A stretch of DNA of 64,000 nucleotides, from positions 816,541 through 880,540 of the forward strand of contig NW_005434655.1 of the NCBI RefSeq assembly GCF_000315625.1, read 5' to 3'. The notes under the pieces are model-generated. The model saw only the letters and a program-made list of their open reading frames with translations, ran no database searches and was not told where the DNA came from. The stretch is from Guillardia theta CCMP2712 (lineage: Eukaryota > Protista > Cryptophyta). Positions 11,811 to 17,884 of this stretch are shown in pieces. Position numbers and translations under genes: made by a program. Position 1 is the stretch's first letter. Every line of letters begins with the position of its first letter.

Positions 11811-12818
11811 AAGACAAGTTGAGTCACAAATATAAATTAGTTTCGCAGGATCAAGTTGGAATTCTGCTTGCAATCATCGGAGGGCCACCTCTCGTTTTAC
11901 TGGGGCTGGACCGGGTCCTTTGCGTTGCTTACACCACCCCACCCCCCTATCCTCCAGTACATTTCAGGCTCTCAGTTGGGGGGGACTCGCACCGGATATC
12001 GGGGGAGTGCGGCGGAAGATAGGGTCGTGATTGTGGAGTGTGGTGGGTAGGGGTGGTGACGAAGGATCTTCTAATCGGGGTGGTGGGGGTTCAATTCTTC
12101 CACTTCTGGGGGAATCGGTGCTGTAGTAAACTTACGCAGAATTGAGGGTGGGGGTCCAAAAGTGCTCTTCGGCGGTAGGGTGGGTCCCCCATGTGCGGTA
12201 CCTCCAGGCATGTGGTGGTGGGTACTCTTCGGTTTTTGGGGAACTGGGGTGGGTAGTTTGAGGGGAAATGGAGGGGTGGGGTCAAAAAAGAGTCATGGCG
12301 GTTTGATCACTCATCCCCCGTACGCACAAGTGGAGGACTAGGAAGGGGGACGAGCCGCGTGGCAATGGCAGGAGGAGGAGGAGGAGGAGGAGGTGGTGGT
12401 GGTGGTGGTGGAGCATCAGCAGGTAGAAGGAGCTGGAAGCAAGAGCAAGGGCAGGAGCAGGAGCAGTCATGTAAGATCTGGAGCAGGAGCAAAGAAAAGG
12501 ACACTGAAAGTACCTTGTAGGCTCCTCAGAAGGGGAGGAGCTCGGAACCAGCTCAAGACGATGAAGCTAGGACCCTAGAAAGATGGAGACGGCTGGAAAG
12601 AGAATAAGGATAGCAGGGGGGGAGCGAGGAATCGAATGAGTGCTAGGGGGAATAGAGCACCTTGCTTCAAAGGTGGGGGCGAGGTACTAAATGTGCTGTA
12701 GTGACGGAGGCTCCAGCTTGGGGAGTGTCAGGCAGGGAGCAGATTGCTAAGTCTCAGGTGCAAGCTGCATGTTTCGATGGATACACATACTGCATTCCTC
12801 TGACTCCTCTCATCACAG

Positions 12819-15800
12819 ATGCGCGTTCATCCTTCAAGCGAGGAAGGAGCGGATTCAGTGAGTGATGCACTGCCCTCCTTCGCACCTGCGCACAGGTCGT
12901 GGGATGCGCGACCCATGTACAACAGGAGGGTCTCAGCAGACGCGCTCGTCACGGGCTTGGAGGACAGGAAGGCGAAAAATCGAGTGGTGAACGGAGCACA
13001 CAGAGCAAGGTCGAAGAGTGTTTATGATGCTGAGTCGGTCAAGAATGGGGTCAAGGAGCAGAGGAGGACAAGTTCGGACTCAAGAAGGCCAGGCTTCGCC
13101 GCGCATGAACTCTTCCAGAAGATTGAGAGCGAGCGTAAGTTCTGAGATCTGATGGTGTTCCCTTGGTAAGCTTTGATGGCGCAGGCGCAATACGGAGGAA
13201 TTCCTCCAACGTCGAATTGAACAAGGATCTGTCCATGAACGGGAAAGAAGATGGGGGGCAGGCAAAGAATGGAGGTGCTCCATCTCAAACCATGCCAGAA
13301 GAGAAGCTGGTCGTCAAAAAAGAGGGAGAGGTCGAGAGCGGTGGTGGGGATAGAGATTGGCGGAAGAACAGGGGGATTGTCGAGGACAGGATTGTGGCTC
13401 TCAGGAGATTTCTGACCTTGATCAGTGCCTCTAGTATCCTCTTCTCTTGCTTGCAGCACGAGATGATCATCCAGAACACCAATCCTCACTCTCTTGCCAT
13501 CAACACCCTCAAGATCCTCTGTCTCATCCTCGCCTTCGTCAGCGTCGGTGATGCTGCACTAGCTCGCGGATCCTCGGCTGACATGTTGTTTGACTGCAGT
13601 CACTCTGTACAGGATCTTCTACCTCAAGAAAATCTTCATCAGGATCCAGTTGCATCTGCGATCGCTGCATCGCCTGGATCTCAACGTCGCCCCTCTCAGC
13701 ATCGTGAAGGAACCCAAGTTCCTCCTGCAGACAGCCATCTTCCTCCTCCACGTCCCTCCCTTCGTCTCCTTCACCATCCCCGTCCAGTTCGGCCAGAACT
13801 TCATCCTGTACCAGATCGAGTCGGTCGGCGCTCTCTGGAGCACGACGAGGGTATTCCTCCTCTGGTCCTGCTTGCGCGACTTCGTCCTCCGATCGCTGCC
13901 CAAGAGACACACTGTCTCCAACTTCACCGAGATCGACCTGGGAAGCGCGTTTGCGGTCAAGACTATCATGCATGGTTACTATGCTGTGTTCTTCATCGCC
14001 ATGGTGTGGATAGTGAGTGTTCTGCTGGCGGCGTACTGGTTCAGAGCCGTTGAGGTCACAGCCTGTCAGTTCGCGTTCACGACAGACCCGCGATGTCTGC
14101 GGGTCAACGCGAGGATGTGGTGGAACGAGCAGGGGGAGTACGAGAAAGTGAATGACCTGTACATGCAAAATGCGATGTGGGCGATGTTCACGACGAGCAC
14201 GACAGTCGGTGAGGAGAAGAGAGGGGAGGAGTGGAAGGAGGAGGACGTAGAGATGCGATTGAGGAGGACGAGGACGACGGGGGGGAAGGAGGAGGTGGCG
14301 GAAGATGAGGAAGGGGGAGGAGTGTTTGGGGGGGGGAGGAACAGGGGAAGGAGGATGAGGTACGCTCGAGCTGACTGTGCTCCCTCCAGGATACGGGGAC
14401 GTGCTTGCAACGACTTCACTTGGACGCCTCGTGTCGATCTTCATGTCCATCATCGGGCTGTCCATGGTCGCCATGCTGACCGCGTCGCTAATGCAGAGAC
14501 TTCAATTCACGAACAAGGAGCAGACGGCGCTGCTCATGTTCGACAAGCTCTCCGCCCTCCACCACCTGGAGAGGCACGCGGCAGAGTTGCTGCAGGTGTG
14601 GTACAGGATCAGGCGGGAGCAGAAGCTGAATGCCAGCAAGAGAGAGAGCGCGAGGAGAGTACACTTGCAGCAGATCAAGGACGACTTCAAGAAGAAGAAG
14701 AAGGTAGCCCGCGCAGAGATGGAAGACTGCTTCTCCGACCAGGCCAAGATCGATCAGATCCACGAGCGCCTGAAAACCTTGTGCTCTTCCCTGCAAGAGA
14801 GGATGCAGAAATCTTCACCCCGCGGTAGCCTGAAGCGTCAGGGGTCCCACGATGGCTCCGTGGTCTCCTCAAGCTCCAGAAGGAGCAACGGTACCAATCC
14901 TCTTCCTCCTCCACCTGTTCCCCCTCCTCCTCCTCCCGAGGCTTTGTTGGTCTCGTCCTTCGCTCCCCGGGACTGGCGGCGGAGCCCTGTGAAGGTGGAC
15001 GAGCAGATCACCAGGAGCAGCAGGCTTGCTCTCCTCTTCGCCTCCCTGGGGACCCTCTTCGCGCTCCTGCAGAACGAGCTGATCTTCGCCGAGGAGGATC
15101 CTCATGATACTAGGATCAACGCGCTCAAGTTCGCCAACACTTGCTGCTCCGTCGTCTGTGTGGTGGGCTAGTGCTCCCCCTCTCCTCTCCCCCTGGTCTT
15201 TTTCATCTCTCTCGTATCCTCCATCTCGACCTCCTCCTCGTCATCGTCGTCATCATCCTCCACCTCTTCCACCTCCTCGACCTCGTCCTCGTTCGCTCTC
15301 TATCCCCGACCGGTTGCCGCTGACTTTCTCTGCAGGTCTTTCTTCATCGTATCTACGCGCACGAGATTCTCCTGCAGCGCATCATCGGGCACATCCAGCG
15401 AGGCCTCGAGCTGAGCACGCACGTCCCCGTCTCCTCCGTCTTTCACAGCAGCAAGTTCTGGACGGAAGCAGCCGTCTGCCTCCTCCACCTCCCTCCCTTC
15501 TTCACCTTCGAGATCGCCAGCATGATGATGGGCAACATCGTGGCCTACCGCGGGGAGACAGTCATGTGCTCTTTCAACATTCTCCGCGTCTACCTCGCAT
15601 GGCGCGTCTTTCGGCAGAAGCATCTCACCCACCTGCCCAACCGTCACACCATCGAGCTGTTCACACGCGTCAAGTTCAACTCCATCTTCGTGCTCAAGCT
15701 CATGCTCAACAGCTGGAACGCCGTCTTCTACCTCCTCCTCTGCGGCTTCCTCTTCGTCCTCCTCGTCGGCTACCTCTACCGCAACGCCGAGATCTCCTCC

Positions 15801-16722
15801 TGTCTCCTCGCCACCACCTCCCACCCCATGTGCCTCCTCCCCGAAGCCAGGAAGTGGAAGATTGCCGGCAATGAGTTCGACAAGACCAACGACTTCTTCC
15901 TCCTCAATGCGTGCTGGTTCATCTGGACCTCTGTCCTCCCTGGAGCAGGAGGCGGCAGCATGTGCTCCACCCACTTCAGCCGCTTCCTCGCCGCCATGGC
16001 GGCGCTCTACGGCATCCTGACCTCCTCCATCACGGCAGCGACGCTGGCGAACCTGTTCAACTACAGCACGGAGGAGAGCACAGCGCTGGGTATCATTTCC
16101 AGGGAGAAGTCGAGGGAGAGGGTCAGGGCGATCGCTGCCGACATCCTCATCCTCTGGTGGAAACGAGCGACCGGCCGTCCTCTCACCCGCAGGCAGAGGA
16201 ACCTGAATACCTCCAGCTTGAGGTGAACCCAGCTCTCTCCCCCCCTCCTTTCCTCTCTCTCCCCCTCCTTTCCTCTCTCGCTCCCCTCCTGTCCTGTCCT
16301 GTCCTGTCCTGTCCTGTCCTGCCCCCACCTCTCGCTTCCCCTCCCCTCTCCCTCCCTCTCCTCTCTCTTTCTCTCTGCTCTCATCTCCCACGTCCTGCTC
16401 TCCTTGTCGCTCGTATCAAGGGGATGACTATGTGCTGCAGGCAAGCCCTGAGGGAGGAGAAGATGCTGGTGAATGTCGAGCTGGAGGATGTTGCCAGCAG
16501 CAGCAGCAAAGTACAACAGGTAGGAGGAGGAGGAGGAGGAGGAGGAGGAGGAGGACGAGGAGGAGGAGGAGGAGGAGGAGGAGGAGGAGGACGAGGACGA
16601 GGACGAGGAGAAGGGCAAGGAAGGGGAGGAAGGCAAGACAGTGAGGTCTTTTTCTGACTGACTTGCTGTCTCTTGCTCAGATCTCCAAGAGGTTGAAGTA
16701 CATTGAGAGTTACTTGGAAAGG
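12819..16722 (+). CDS. Tandem two-domain small-conductance Ca2+-activated (SK/KCNN-like) K+ channel; 3' end runs into the gap
   Basis: Two homologous 6TM units (LQHEM...LLHVPPF and LQNEL...LLHLPPF). Pore 1 NAMWAMFTTSTTV|GYGD is split by intron 14209-14389. CaM-binding-like helices AAELLQVWYR and AADILILWWK. ORF 14377-15171 joins unit 1 to unit 2. Confidence 0.9.
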
Positions 16723-16885
16723 GTGAGCGAGGAGGACAAAAACGAGAACTCCTCCTGATGTTCTCTGCTCCTGCTCCTGCTCCTGCTCCTGCTACTGCTC
16801 CTGCTGCTGCTCCTCTGCTGCTGCTCGTGCTCCTAGCTCCGATTAGTAGATGGAGTTTGCAGCCTCTCGTCCACTTCGACGTCTC

Positions 16886-17884
16886 NNNNNNNNNNNNNNN
16901 NNNNNNNNNNNNNNNNNNNNNNNNNNNNNNNNNNNNNNNNNNNNNNNNNNNNNNNNNNNNNNNNNNNNNNNNNNNNNNNNNNNNNNNNNNNNNNNNNNNN
17001 NNNNNNNNNNNNNNNNNNNNNNNNNNNNNNNNNNNNNNNNNNNNNNNNNNNNNNNNNNNNNNNNNNNNNNNNNNNNNNNNNNNNNNNNNNNNNNNNNNNN
17101 NNNNNNNNNNNNNNNNNNNNNNNNNNNNNNNNNNNNNNNNNNNNNNNNNNNNNNNNNNNNNNNNNNNNNNNNNNNNNNNNNNNNNNNNNNNNNNNNNNNN
17201 NNNNNNNNNNNNNNNNNNNNNNNNNNNNNNNNNNNNNNNNNNNNNNNNNNNNNNNNNNNNNNNNNNNNNNNNNNNNNNNNNNNNNNNNNNNNNNNNNNNN
17301 NNNNNNNNNNNNNNNNNNNNNNNNNNNNNNNNNNNNNNNNNNNNNNNNNNNNNNNNNNNNNNNNNNNNNNNNNNNNNNNNNNNNNNNNNNNNNNNNNNNN
17401 NNNNNNNNNNNNNNNNNNNNNNNNNNNNNNNNNNNNNNNNNNNNNNNNNNNNNNNNNNNNNNNNNNNNNNNNNNNNNNNNNNNNNNNNNNNNNNNNNNNN
17501 NNNNNNNNNNNNNNNNNNNNNNNNNNNNNNNNNNNNNNNNNNNNNNNNNNNNNNNNNNNNNNNNNNNNNNNNNNNNNNNNNNNNNNNNNNNNNNNNNNNN
17601 NNNNNNNNNNNNNNNNNNNNNNNNNNNNNNNNNNNNNNNNNNNNNNNNNNNNNNNNNNNNNNNNNNNNNNNNNNNNNNNNNNNNNNNNNNNNNNNNNNNN
17701 NNNNNNNNNNNNNNNNNNNNNNNNNNNNNNNNNNNNNNNNNNNNNNNNNNNNNNNNNNNNNNNNNNNNNNNNNNNNNNNNNNNNNNNNNNNNNNNNNNNN
17801 NNNNNNNNNNNNNNNNNNNNNNNNNNNNNNNNNNNNNNNNNNNNNNNNNNNNNNNNNNNNNNNNNNNNNNNNNNNNNNNNNNNN
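16886..17884. other. Assembly gap (~1 kb of N); other gaps at 1744-1843, 3318-3417, 23206-23305, 40616-40715, 44431-44530
   Basis: N runs, most flanked by microsatellites. Confidence 1.

What the first reader, a model, noticed from the sequence alone, without database searches (positions are those of the whole stretch)
12819..16722. Tandem (2x6TM) SK-type K+ channel with an asymmetric, non-canonical second selectivity filter
Seen: one gene encodes two homologous SK-like units that align residue by residue and are joined in the open frame 14377-15171. Pore 1 is canonical (FTTSTTV|GYGD, 14199-14400, split by an intron). At the equivalent position, pore 2 reads WTSVLPGAGGGSMCSTHFSR (15924-15959), while its pore helix, S6 and CaM-binding-like helix are intact. 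Established: KCNN/SK channels are tetramers of single 6TM subunits, and TVGYG confers K+ selectivity. Inference: a dimer of this chain would form a pseudo-tetrameric pore with two GYG and two GAG/GGG loops, so selectivity may be altered (NaK- or TPC-like). I know no described two-domain SK channel of this kind. Both units also carry a Cys-paired turret (ACQF...RC and SCLL...MC).
Basis: partly seen in the sequence, partly recalled or inferred. Interest (0 to 1): 0.85.

Follow-up and report, generated by a model that had tools for sequence, protein, structure and literature searches.

The report
Tandem SK-like channel, odd second pore
This Guillardia theta gene encodes two SK/IK-type potassium-channel units fused in one chain, and the second unit replaces the universal GYG filter with a PGxGG loop conserved across a clade of cryptophyte relatives, so it is a natural, untested case of a potassium-channel pore built from two different filter loops.

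Summary
A seven-exon, all GT-AG gene on the + strand (12819-16758, about 1034 aa) encodes two homologous 6TM channel units. They align without gaps from S2 to the pore helix (BLASTP E 3e-39). Pore 1 reads TTVGYGD. The gap-free equivalent in pore 2 reads LPGAGGG.

- **Family:** the genome is Guillardia theta, and every named relative is a cryptophyte. A family profile hits SK4/SK2 structures at E about 4e-26, against 3e-14 for KcsA. An AlphaFold model of unit 2 (pLDDT 94) matches only SK2/SK4 over S2-S6 (Z 14, 204 residues).
- **Fusion:** it is real in relatives, shown by uninterrupted 757-798 aa ORFs, a 1329-aa complete transcript ORF in Teleaulax, and a 1111-aa G. theta paralogue that aligns end to end.
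- **Second filter:** it is not decay or error. P-G-x-G is invariant in 12 sequences with median 48% identity. That clade is monophyletic inside the unit-2 clade. Units 1 and 2 are equally conserved between paralogues (47% and 46%).

Tandem 6TM Kv-like and CNBD channels of protists are published. I found no description of an SK-type tandem or of this filter. I rate it a new variant of a known kind.

The parts
12819..16758 (+). Whole coding region of the tandem channel gene. Exons are 12819-13134, 13185-13547, 13600-14208, 14390-15162, 15336-16222, 16441-16519 and 16681-16758. It is about 1034 aa, with the stop at 16756-16758.
   Evidence: open frame, six GT-AG introns of 50-218 nt. Five of the six junctions fall in gap-free alignment with G. 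theta paralogue P0151. The first intron (13135-13184) and the start codon lie in a poorly conserved N-terminus and are the least certain.
13391..14502 (+). Unit 1, S1 to S6. It is interrupted by introns 13548-13599 and 14209-14389.
   Evidence: It is 46.9% identical to unit 1 of P0151 and sits in the unit-1 clade (SH-aLRT 96).
14061..14096 (+). Unit 1 turret with the Cys pair (ACQFAFTTDPRC).
   Evidence: Both Cys columns are at least 90% conserved in the family alignments.
14199..14400 (+). Pore 1 selectivity filter TTVGYGD, split by the 181-nt intron 14209-14389 inside the first Gly codon.
   Evidence: Removing 181 nt shifts the frame from 0 to 1, as the downstream homology requires. Ion_trans_2 hits the exon that starts at YGD.
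14512..14619 (+). Post-S6 helix of unit 1, equivalent to the SK HA helix (the calmodulin-binding region in SK/IK).
   Evidence: The family profile aligns this region to SK4 residues about 285-385. Pfam CaMBD is not detected.
14809..15006 (+). Low-complexity Ser/Pro-rich linker between the units, in the same exon as S6 of unit 1 and S1 of unit 2.
   Evidence: It is 19% identical to P0151. The equivalent part of P0151 has pLDDT below 50.
15007..16046 (+). Unit 2, S1 to S6. It is interrupted by intron 15163-15335.
   Evidence: It is 46.0% identical to unit 2 of P0151. The AlphaFold model of exon 15336-16220 has pLDDT 94.3. SK2/SK4 are the only whole-length matches.
15798..15833 (+). Unit 2 turret with the Cys pair (SCLLATTSHPMC), followed by a predicted beta-hairpin.
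   Evidence: nearly invariant Cys columns; strands at exon residues 173-182.
15900..15935 (+). Pore helix of unit 2 (LLNACWFIWTSV).
   Evidence: (helix 189-200 of the exon model).
15936..15956 (+). Non-canonical pore-2 loop LPGAGGG, at the gap-free equivalent of TTVGYGD.
   Evidence: The P, first G and third-position G of P-G-x-G-G are invariant in 12 clade members. All sampled words of 15880-16222 are held by four runs. This loop is the only dip in model confidence (pLDDT 74).
16068..16172 (+). Post-S6 helix of unit 2 (HA-like), followed in the last exons by an HB/HC-like V-x-x-E-D segment.
   Evidence: The Hanusia phi transcriptome fragment P0053 is 92% identical here.

Best explanation
This is an intact nuclear gene of the cryptophyte Guillardia theta. 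It encodes one polypeptide with two SK/IK-like (KCNN-like) 6TM channel units in tandem. It belongs to a family whose named members are all cryptophytes.

The internal duplication is old: unit 1 and unit 2 form separate clades. Within one subclade of unit 2, the K+ signature T-V-G-Y-G-D was replaced once by x-P-G-[AGS]-G-[GN]-[GN], and that loop has been kept under purifying selection since.

Inferred mechanism:
- Two chains assemble head to head, as K2P and TPC channels do, into a pseudo-tetramer.
- Unit-1 and unit-2 pore domains alternate. The filter is therefore two-fold symmetric, with two canonical GYG strands and two Gly-rich PGxGG strands.
- Each unit keeps its own SK-like S4-S5 two-helix linker and post-S6 HA/HB/HC helices. 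Gating is therefore most likely by a cytosolic ligand acting there, with Ca2+-calmodulin as the default guess.
- The mixed filter most likely still passes cations, but with weaker or different K+ selectivity than a four-GYG pore.

Shown: gene structure, tandem homology, SK relationship, conservation and monophyly of the second filter.
Inferred: stoichiometry, gating ligand, selectivity.

The confidence of 0.6 is for the whole statement. For the shown parts alone it is about 0.9, for dimeric pseudo-tetramer assembly about 0.65, and for altered selectivity about 0.45.
For: - **Gene model and internal repeat:**
- **Organism and family range:**. Named members come from Guillardia, Hanusia, Hemiselmis, Teleaulax, Proteomonas and Rhodomonas.
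- **Tandem architecture in relatives:**
  - At least 10 representatives of 757-1399 aa show two matched stretches.
  - L001 and L002 carry 798-aa and 757-aa uninterrupted ORFs from pore 1 to the end of unit 2. L001 carries nearly the whole paralogue with no intron.
  - A Teleaulax transcript ORF is marked complete at 1329 aa.
  - There is end-to-end alignment with XP_005834152.
- **SK relationship:**
  - Profile against the PDB gives SK4/SK2 at 4e-26, covering S1-S4 and pore-S6-HA/HB, with KcsA next at 3e-14.
  - Pfam SK_channel passes its cutoff in P0004 and P0005.
  - The top 19 Foldseek hits are all SK2/SK4 for both models.
  - VIA gives Z 14.2, rmsd 3.1 A, over 204 residues.
- **Constraint on pore 2:**
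  - The motif occurs in at least 11 representative clusters besides the window.
  - P-G-x-G is invariant at median 48% identity.
  - The clade has SH-aLRT 97 and is nested in the unit-2 clade (95). Its branch lengths are like those of GYG units.
  - Unit cores are 46.9% and 46.0% identical to the paralogue.
  - The Hanusia phi orthologue fragment is 92% identical.
- **Both units keep the same helix set after S6** in the full-length paralogue model.
Against:
- The gene's product is not in the protein collections, so it may be weakly expressed or unannotated.
- Pfam does not call SK_channel or CaMBD on the window's exon pieces, and CaMBD is found in no relative. Calmodulin gating therefore rests on homology of the HA region alone.
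- The dimer could not be modelled. Monomer models say nothing about how the two pores pack.
- From established knowledge, replacing GYG in only some subunits of Kir or Kv tetramers usually kills conduction. A conducting mixed filter is therefore not a given.
Confidence: 0.6

Rival explanations
1. The architecture is the same, but the channel is still K+-selective. If the loop is read one residue out of register (x-P-G-A-G-G against T-V-G-Y-G-D), the two glycines that allow the filter backbone conformation are kept. The carbonyl cage could then survive with Val to Pro and Tyr to Ala/Gly/Ser, much as K2P channels tolerate GFG or GLG in their second pore.
For: - The conserved core is P-G-x-G-G, with G at both positions that would match G77 and G79 of KcsA in the shifted register.
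- The pore helix of unit 2 ends one residue earlier than that of unit 1 in the paralogue model.
- The total loop length is unchanged.
Against: - The residue at the would-be Thr75 position is not conserved (T, Q, M, I, F, L).
- Pro cannot replace Val without changing the backbone.
- Tyr78 and Asp80, which buttress the filter, are both lost.
- Loop confidence drops in the model.
Confidence: 0.3
2. Unit 2 does not line a conducting filter. The protein is a non-conducting sensor or scaffold, or unit 2 serves only as a structural partner, for example as a dominant modulator of other SK-like subunits.
For: - Established knowledge: GYG-to-AAA subunits are dominant negatives in Kir and Kv channels.
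- The family holds further broken filters (P0008 TTVGFTT, P0017 STKGNNGA).
Against: - The loop itself is the best-conserved block of the region. A merely inert spacer would not need that.
- The pore helix, S6 and turret Cys pair of unit 2 are all kept.
Confidence: 0.1
3. These are two separate genes or transcripts, with unit 2 expressed on its own, rather than one fusion protein.
For: - No RNA reads could be laid.
- Several clade members in the databases are single-unit fragments (P0011, P0012).
Against: - The junction lies inside one open exon with no stop (14390-15162).
- Relatives have uninterrupted ORFs and a complete transcript ORF across both units.
- Unit-1 and unit-2 clades are separate, as expected for obligate partners.
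- The single-unit hits sit on contigs too short to exclude an upstream unit.
Confidence: 0.04
4. Pore 2 is an artefact or a decaying copy: a sequencing or assembly error, a missed intron that would restore GYG, or a pseudogenised second unit.
For: - The window has an assembly gap 130 nt downstream of the gene.
- The product is absent from the protein collections.
Against: - All 29 sampled words of 15880-16222 are held by four runs, and 41% by a run under another organism label.
- The same motif is present in independent assemblies, inside uninterrupted ORFs.
- There is no length difference that an intron could account for.
- The two units show equal conservation.
- The clade is monophyletic with ordinary branch lengths.
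Confidence: 0.02

Closest known systems
Animal SK/IK channels (KCNN1-4; KCa2.x, KCa3.1)
   Same: - The fold matches from S2 to S6, including the two short helices between S4 and S5 and a long post-S6 helix.
- This is the only family that matches over the whole unit by profile (E about 4e-26) and by structure (Z 14.2 over 204 residues; top 19 Foldseek hits).
- S4 lacks the regular Arg ladder.
- From my own recollection, the predicted beta-hairpin between S3 and S4 resembles the one reported for KCa2.2.
   Different: - SK/IK are tetramers of single 6TM subunits with four identical GYG filters. Here two units are fused and the second filter is PGxGG.
- The S5-P turret is about 30 residues longer and carries a conserved Cys pair and hairpin.
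- Pfam CaMBD is not detected.
- Identity to SK is only 15-21%.
[quoted passage not shown] 2020, PMC7576140)
   Same: - Two 6TM repeats sit in one chain at about 30% identity.
- First and second repeats fall into separate clades, which was read there as co-evolution and specialisation of the repeats.
   Different: - Those are Kv-like or CNBD channels of SAR lineages, and both repeats keep TVGYG-like filters.
- This one is SK-like and cryptophyte, and has a clade-wide non-canonical second filter.
- The paper names neither cryptophytes nor Guillardia (no occurrence of either term). It covers Kv-like and CNBD channels.
K2P (KCNK) and fungal TOK channels
   Same: Two pore loops sit in each chain, a dimer forms the pore, and the two filter sequences need not be identical (GYG with GFG or GLG).
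   Different: - They have 4TM or 8TM architecture and no SK-like S1-S4 or HA helices.
- Their second filter still keeps G-[FL]-G with an aromatic or large hydrophobic residue.
Two-pore channels (TPC1-3)
   Same: They have 2x6TM in one chain, dimerise into a pseudo-tetramer, and have two different filter sequences that give two-fold symmetry.
   Different: - There is no structural or sequence match beyond the generic 6TM fold (TPC2 E 0.02, TM 0.10).
- No EF-hand was found in the linker of relatives.
- TPC filters are not derived from GYG within the family.
NaK, CNG and HCN channels (K-channel-fold pores with altered filters)
   Same: They show that small departures from TVGYG on the same pore fold give non-selective cation conduction.
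   Different: Those have four identical altered strands. Here two canonical and two altered strands would be mixed in one pore.

Membership tests
SK/IK (KCNN) channels | Sequence-profile similarity to SK/IK that exceeds similarity to other K+ channels and covers both S1-S4 and pore-S6-HA. | tested here: met
   family profile A1 against the PDB gives SK4/SK2 at 3.8e-26 to 3.5e-23, with two stretches (profile 8-200 and 229-391). KcsA follows at 3.4e-14 over the pore only. Single exon pieces of the window found nothing by phmmer.
SK/IK (KCNN) channels | SK fold: 6TM with a two-helix S4-S5 linker (S45A/S45B) and a long post-S6 HA helix. | tested here: met
   helices 103-110 and 116-124 lie between S4 and S5, and helix 245-279 follows S6; only SK2/SK4 chains align over S2-S6 (Z 12.5-14.2, about 204 residues, rmsd 3.1-3.7 A).
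SK/IK (KCNN) channels | Pfam SK_channel (PF03530) at the gathering score. | tested here: inconclusive
   It is not found on the window's exon pieces, where introns split the domain. Among relatives, P0004 (36.0) and P0005 (35.4) pass the 31.8 cutoff, and P0002 and P0016 fall just below.
SK/IK (KCNN) channels | Calmodulin-binding domain (Pfam CaMBD PF02888) and Ca2+/calmodulin gating. | tested here: not met
   No CaMBD hit at E up to 1 on the window pieces, or up to 0.1 in ten relatives. The HA region does align to SK4. Binding itself cannot be tested here.
SK/IK (KCNN) channels | GYG filter in every pore-forming unit. | tested here: not met
   Unit 1 has TTVGYGD. Unit 2 has LPGAGGG.
SK/IK (KCNN) channels | Subunit of one 6TM unit that forms homotetramers. 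| tested here: not met
   Two units sit in one chain.
Two-repeat tandem 6TM channels of protists (PMC7576140) | Two 6TM repeats in one polypeptide, with first and second repeats in separate clades. | tested here: met
   unit-1 clade SH-aLRT 96, unit-2 clade 95.
Two-repeat tandem 6TM channels of protists (PMC7576140) | Repeat unit of Kv-like or CNBD type, with both filters close to TVGYG. | tested here: not met
   The unit is SK-like and the second filter is PGxGG. See for the published filters.
Two-pore channels (TPC) | Structural or sequence similarity to TPC chains, and EF-hands in the inter-repeat linker. | tested here: not met
   TPC2 E 0.02 and TM 0.10, TPC1 E 0.03. No EF-hand family was found in relatives that include the linker.
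K2P channels | 4TM/2P subunit. | tested here: not met
   This is 12TM/2P. Only the principle of two unequal pore loops per chain is shared.

The most novel reading that the evidence does not exclude
The PGxGG clade is a natural K-channel-fold pseudo-tetramer with two canonical GYG strands and two Gly-rich strands across the pore. It would conduct with a selectivity unlike any four-fold K+ filter, for example as a Ca2+/calmodulin-gated non-selective cation or Na+/Ca2+-permeable channel. That would make it a living intermediate showing how four-fold K+ filters can evolve into the asymmetric filters of TPC, Nav and Cav type channels.
Probability: 0.3. Interest if true: 0.8.

Novelty: new variant of a known kind. 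Interest (0 to 1): 0.62.

Why it matters
K+ selectivity is thought to need four identical TVGYG strands. Experimental mixing of intact and broken strands usually kills the channel. Here a mixed design (two GYG strands and two PGxGG strands in a covalent tandem) has been kept across many cryptophyte lineages at under 50% identity, so it presumably works. It is therefore a ready-made test of how much four-fold symmetry a K-channel filter needs. It may also be a model for the step from symmetric to asymmetric filters.

It also extends SK/IK-type channels, known mainly from animals, to a family of tandem proteins in an algal group with a tractable, sequenced model species. Finally, it adds a further, probably independent case of internal duplication of 6TM channels in protists.

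Tried and rejected
- **Pfam on exon pieces** gave only Ion_trans_2 on the YGD-S6 exon and nothing for SK_channel or CaMBD.
- **phmmer of single exons against the PDB** gave nothing. Only the family profile worked.
- **The search for homologous proteins** with the unit-2 exon found nothing. With the paralogue's unit 2 it found only three proteins. Word and length limits explain both.
- **Exact look-up** of the unspliced ORF 15522-16223 found no record.
- **A second run search** on the pore-2 stretch showed that no run on record as RNA holds it.
  - The four 2011 holders are of unknown kind. They hold 0.50-0.70 of the words over 12800-16800. I estimate about 0.72 for exon-only words, which would fit cDNA, but this could not be checked.
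- **Hidden micro-intron in pore 2:** rejected. There is no length difference from unit 1, this gene's introns are 50-218 nt, and relatives carry the same motif in uninterrupted ORFs.
- **TPC relationship:** rejected.
- **Six literature searches** found no description of SK-type tandems or of this filter.
Full report
**What is in the sequence.** The + strand between 12819 and 16758 carries an intron-containing eukaryotic gene. My model has seven exons: 12819-13134, 13185-13547, 13600-14208, 14390-15162, 15336-16222, 16441-16519 and 16681-16758. All six introns are GT-AG and 50-218 nt long. The joined frame is open for about 1034 codons.

Reading through the supposed donor there gives VSEEDKNENSS and a stop at 16756-16758. 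That tail resembles the corresponding part of the paralogue (RAKEDKEEG), so the gene probably ends before the assembly gap that starts at 16887. The first intron and the start codon lie in a poorly conserved N-terminus and are the least certain parts.

**The tandem.** The product holds two homologous units.
- They align over 382 residues at 30% identity, with no gap from S1 to S6.
- BLASTP of the two large exons gives E 3e-39 (34% identity, no gaps). The S6/post-S6 part gives E 2e-5.
- The junction is not a gene-prediction guess. One open exon (14390-15162) carries YGD, S6 and the post-S6 helices of unit 1, a Ser/Pro-rich linker, and S1 of unit 2.
- Pore 1 is TTVGYGD, split by a 181-nt intron inside the first Gly codon. 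Removing it produces exactly the frame shift that the downstream homology needs.
- Pore 2 reads LPGAGGG (15936-15956). In both units it is 23 residues from the pore-helix Trp to the Arg at the start of S6, so no missed intron or indel can restore GYG.

**Organism and family.** A first-stage note places GtACR2 in the same genome, so this is Guillardia theta.

An exhaustive HMMER search of 1.84 billion representatives with the unit-2 exon found only 268 proteins. At least ten are 757-1399 aa with two matched stretches. Every member that carries a name is a cryptophyte: Guillardia theta, Hanusia phi, Hemiselmis tepida, Teleaulax amphioxeia, Proteomonas sulcata and Rhodomonas salina.

The window's own product is not in the collections.
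- The nearest full-length protein is the G. theta paralogue XP_005834152 (GUITHDRAFT_137762, 1111 aa, a hypothetical protein).
- It aligns with my model from residue 152 to the end. Five of the six exon junctions fall in gap-free stretches of that alignment.
- A 76-aa Hanusia phi transcriptome fragment is 92% identical to S6 and HA of unit 2.

**Is the fusion real?** In relatives, yes.
- A metagenomic or metatranscriptomic contig (L001) carries a 798-aa uninterrupted ORF. It runs from S3 of unit 1 to the end of unit 2 and is 94-95% identical to the G. theta paralogue. Nearly the whole gene is there without introns.
- L002 carries a 757-aa uninterrupted exon from pore 1 to the end of unit 2, with upstream exons for the rest of unit 1.
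- A Teleaulax transcript ORF marked complete is 1329 aa.

For this locus I could not show a transcript.
I sent those letters to no search tool afterwards.
- No run on record as RNA holds the gene.
- Four runs of 2011, of unknown kind, hold 100% of the sampled words around pore 2 and 0.50-0.70 of the words over 12800-16800. I estimate about 0.72 for exon-only words. That would fit cDNA, but it is only a hint.

**Is it SK-type?** Single exon pieces gave nothing in Pfam beyond Ion_trans_2, and nothing in the PDB. The family as a profile is clear.
- SK4 and SK2 chains score 3.8e-26 to 3.5e-23, with one stretch over S1-S4 and another over pore, S6 and the HA/HB helices. The next family, KcsA, scores 3e-14 on the pore alone.
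- Pfam SK_channel passes its cutoff in two relatives and falls just short in two more. CaMBD is never detected.
- An AlphaFold model of the unit-2 exon, built with a 52-row family alignment, has pLDDT 94.3. The only dip (74) is at the filter loop. It shows two short helices between S4 and S5 and a 35-residue helix after S6.
- The top 19 Foldseek hits are all SK2/SK4, with Kv3.1 following at E 0.04.
- By VIA-align only SK2/SK4 chains cover S2-S6 (Z 12.5-14.2, about 204 residues, rmsd 3.1-3.7 A). All other hits cover the pore domain alone.
- The full-length paralogue model (pLDDT 74, with disordered termini and linker) shows the same helix set in both units, including three post-S6 helices each. 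It again matches SK2/SK4, not TPC.

Differences from SK are a turret about 30 residues longer, with a nearly invariant Cys pair and a hairpin, the tandem itself, and the second filter.

**Is the second filter constrained?** Yes.
- At the aligned position, most units of the family read T-[TS]-[VI]-G-[YF]-G-[DE].
- One group instead reads x-P-G-[AGS]-G-[GN]-[GN]. It contains the window (LPGAGGG), XP_005834152 (TPGAGNG), P0009 (QPGAGGN), P0175, P0011, P0012, P0054, P0057, P0074, P0078 (TPGAGGG), P0129 and P0025.
- Across these 12 sequences, at a median pairwise identity of 48%, P-G-x-G is invariant. It is the best-conserved block between S5 and S6.
- In a maximum-likelihood tree of 46 units, unit 1 of the window groups with unit 1 of other tandems (SH-aLRT 96).
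- Unit 2 groups with their unit 2 (95). The non-canonical units form one clade (97) inside the unit-2 clade, with branch lengths like those of GYG units.
- Between the window and its paralogue the unit cores are equally conserved, at 46.9% and 46.0%. The linker is 19%.
- Every clade member long enough to judge (the window, XP_005834152/P0001, P0009, P0175) pairs the odd unit 2 with a canonical unit 1. The apparently single-unit hits sit on contigs too short to tell.

So the duplication is old, and the filter changed once and has been kept.

**How it most likely works.** By analogy with K2P and TPC channels, and with the published argument for tandem Kv-like channels (PMC7576140), two chains should form a pseudo-tetramer with alternating unit-1 and unit-2 pore domains. 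That gives two GYG strands and two PGxGG strands across the axis.

Both units keep the SK-like S4-S5 linker and HA/HB/HC helices, so four gating modules would be present as in an SK tetramer. Ca2+-calmodulin is the default ligand, but it rests only on homology of HA.

Selectivity cannot be read from sequence.
- In the gap-free register, Thr75, Val76, Gly77, Tyr78, Gly79 and Asp80 of KcsA become P, G, A, G, G and G/N.
- In a register shifted by one residue, the two key glycines are kept and Val becomes Pro and Tyr becomes Ala.
- My estimates are about 45% for a conducting pore with weakened or changed selectivity, 30% for a still K+-selective pore, and 10% for a non-conducting role. The remainder is unknown.

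**Comparison with what is known.** Tandem two-repeat 6TM channels have been described in dinoflagellates, oomycetes and a chlorarachniophyte. They are Kv-like or CNBD channels with TVGYG-like filters in both repeats. The authors note that strong filter deviations are features of single channels, not clades, apart from animal CNG. KCa2/3-like proteins with GYG or GYX filters have been listed in parasitic protozoa as single units (PMC3283738).

Six full-text searches found nothing on SK-type tandems, on cryptophyte K+ channels of this kind, or on this filter. Subscription journals are not covered, so the absence is not proof. The database entries are only 'hypothetical protein' or 'Potassium channel domain-containing protein'.

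**Verdict.** It is a new variant of known kinds (SK/IK channels and tandem 6TM channels), with a clade-wide asymmetric filter as the new element. Function is untested.

Noticed in passing
relatives P0008 (unit 2) and P0017: The family holds two further, apparently independent non-canonical filters: TTVGFTT in unit 2 of P0008, and STKGNNGA in P0017, whose cluster includes a Rhodomonas salina protein. In the tree they fall outside the PGxGG clade.
   Followed up: partly
L003:7001-10195 (NCBI assembly GCA_031546385.1, contig JAVQIN010094666.1): A 1064-aa tandem member (P0010) lies as one uninterrupted ORF on a compact 15-kb contig next to an asparagine synthase gene. The organism was not identified, and this is the only named-source member not obviously cryptophyte.
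   Followed up: no
window 16222-16226, and P0053: The Hanusia phi transcriptome fragment ends exactly at ...SSLR. That is where the window's exon ends and where the unspliced frame meets TGA. It suggests a retained intron or a fragmentary contig in that transcriptome.
   Followed up: partly
window 16887 to about 17900: A run of N (an assembly gap) starts about 130 nt after the stop codon of the channel gene. The 3' UTR may be incomplete, and this may explain why no gene model of this locus is in the protein collections.
   Followed up: no
window 16228-16400 and 16523-16610: The last two introns are built largely of CT-rich and (GGA)n microsatellite sequence. Places 16344-16384 tripped the reads tool's filter and were left alone afterwards.
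   Followed up: no
same genome, other pieces (first-stage notes s1-432798, s1-431766): First-stage readers report another covalent tandem channel (AKT-like units) with non-canonical filters elsewhere in this genome. Internal duplication of 6TM channels may be common in G. theta.
   Followed up: no
window 14061-14096 and 15798-15833: A C-x(9-10)-C pair in a long S5-P turret is nearly invariant in both units across the whole family, and a predicted beta-hairpin follows it. Animal SK/IK channels have a much shorter turret. A disulfide-stabilised extracellular cap is likely.
   Followed up: partly
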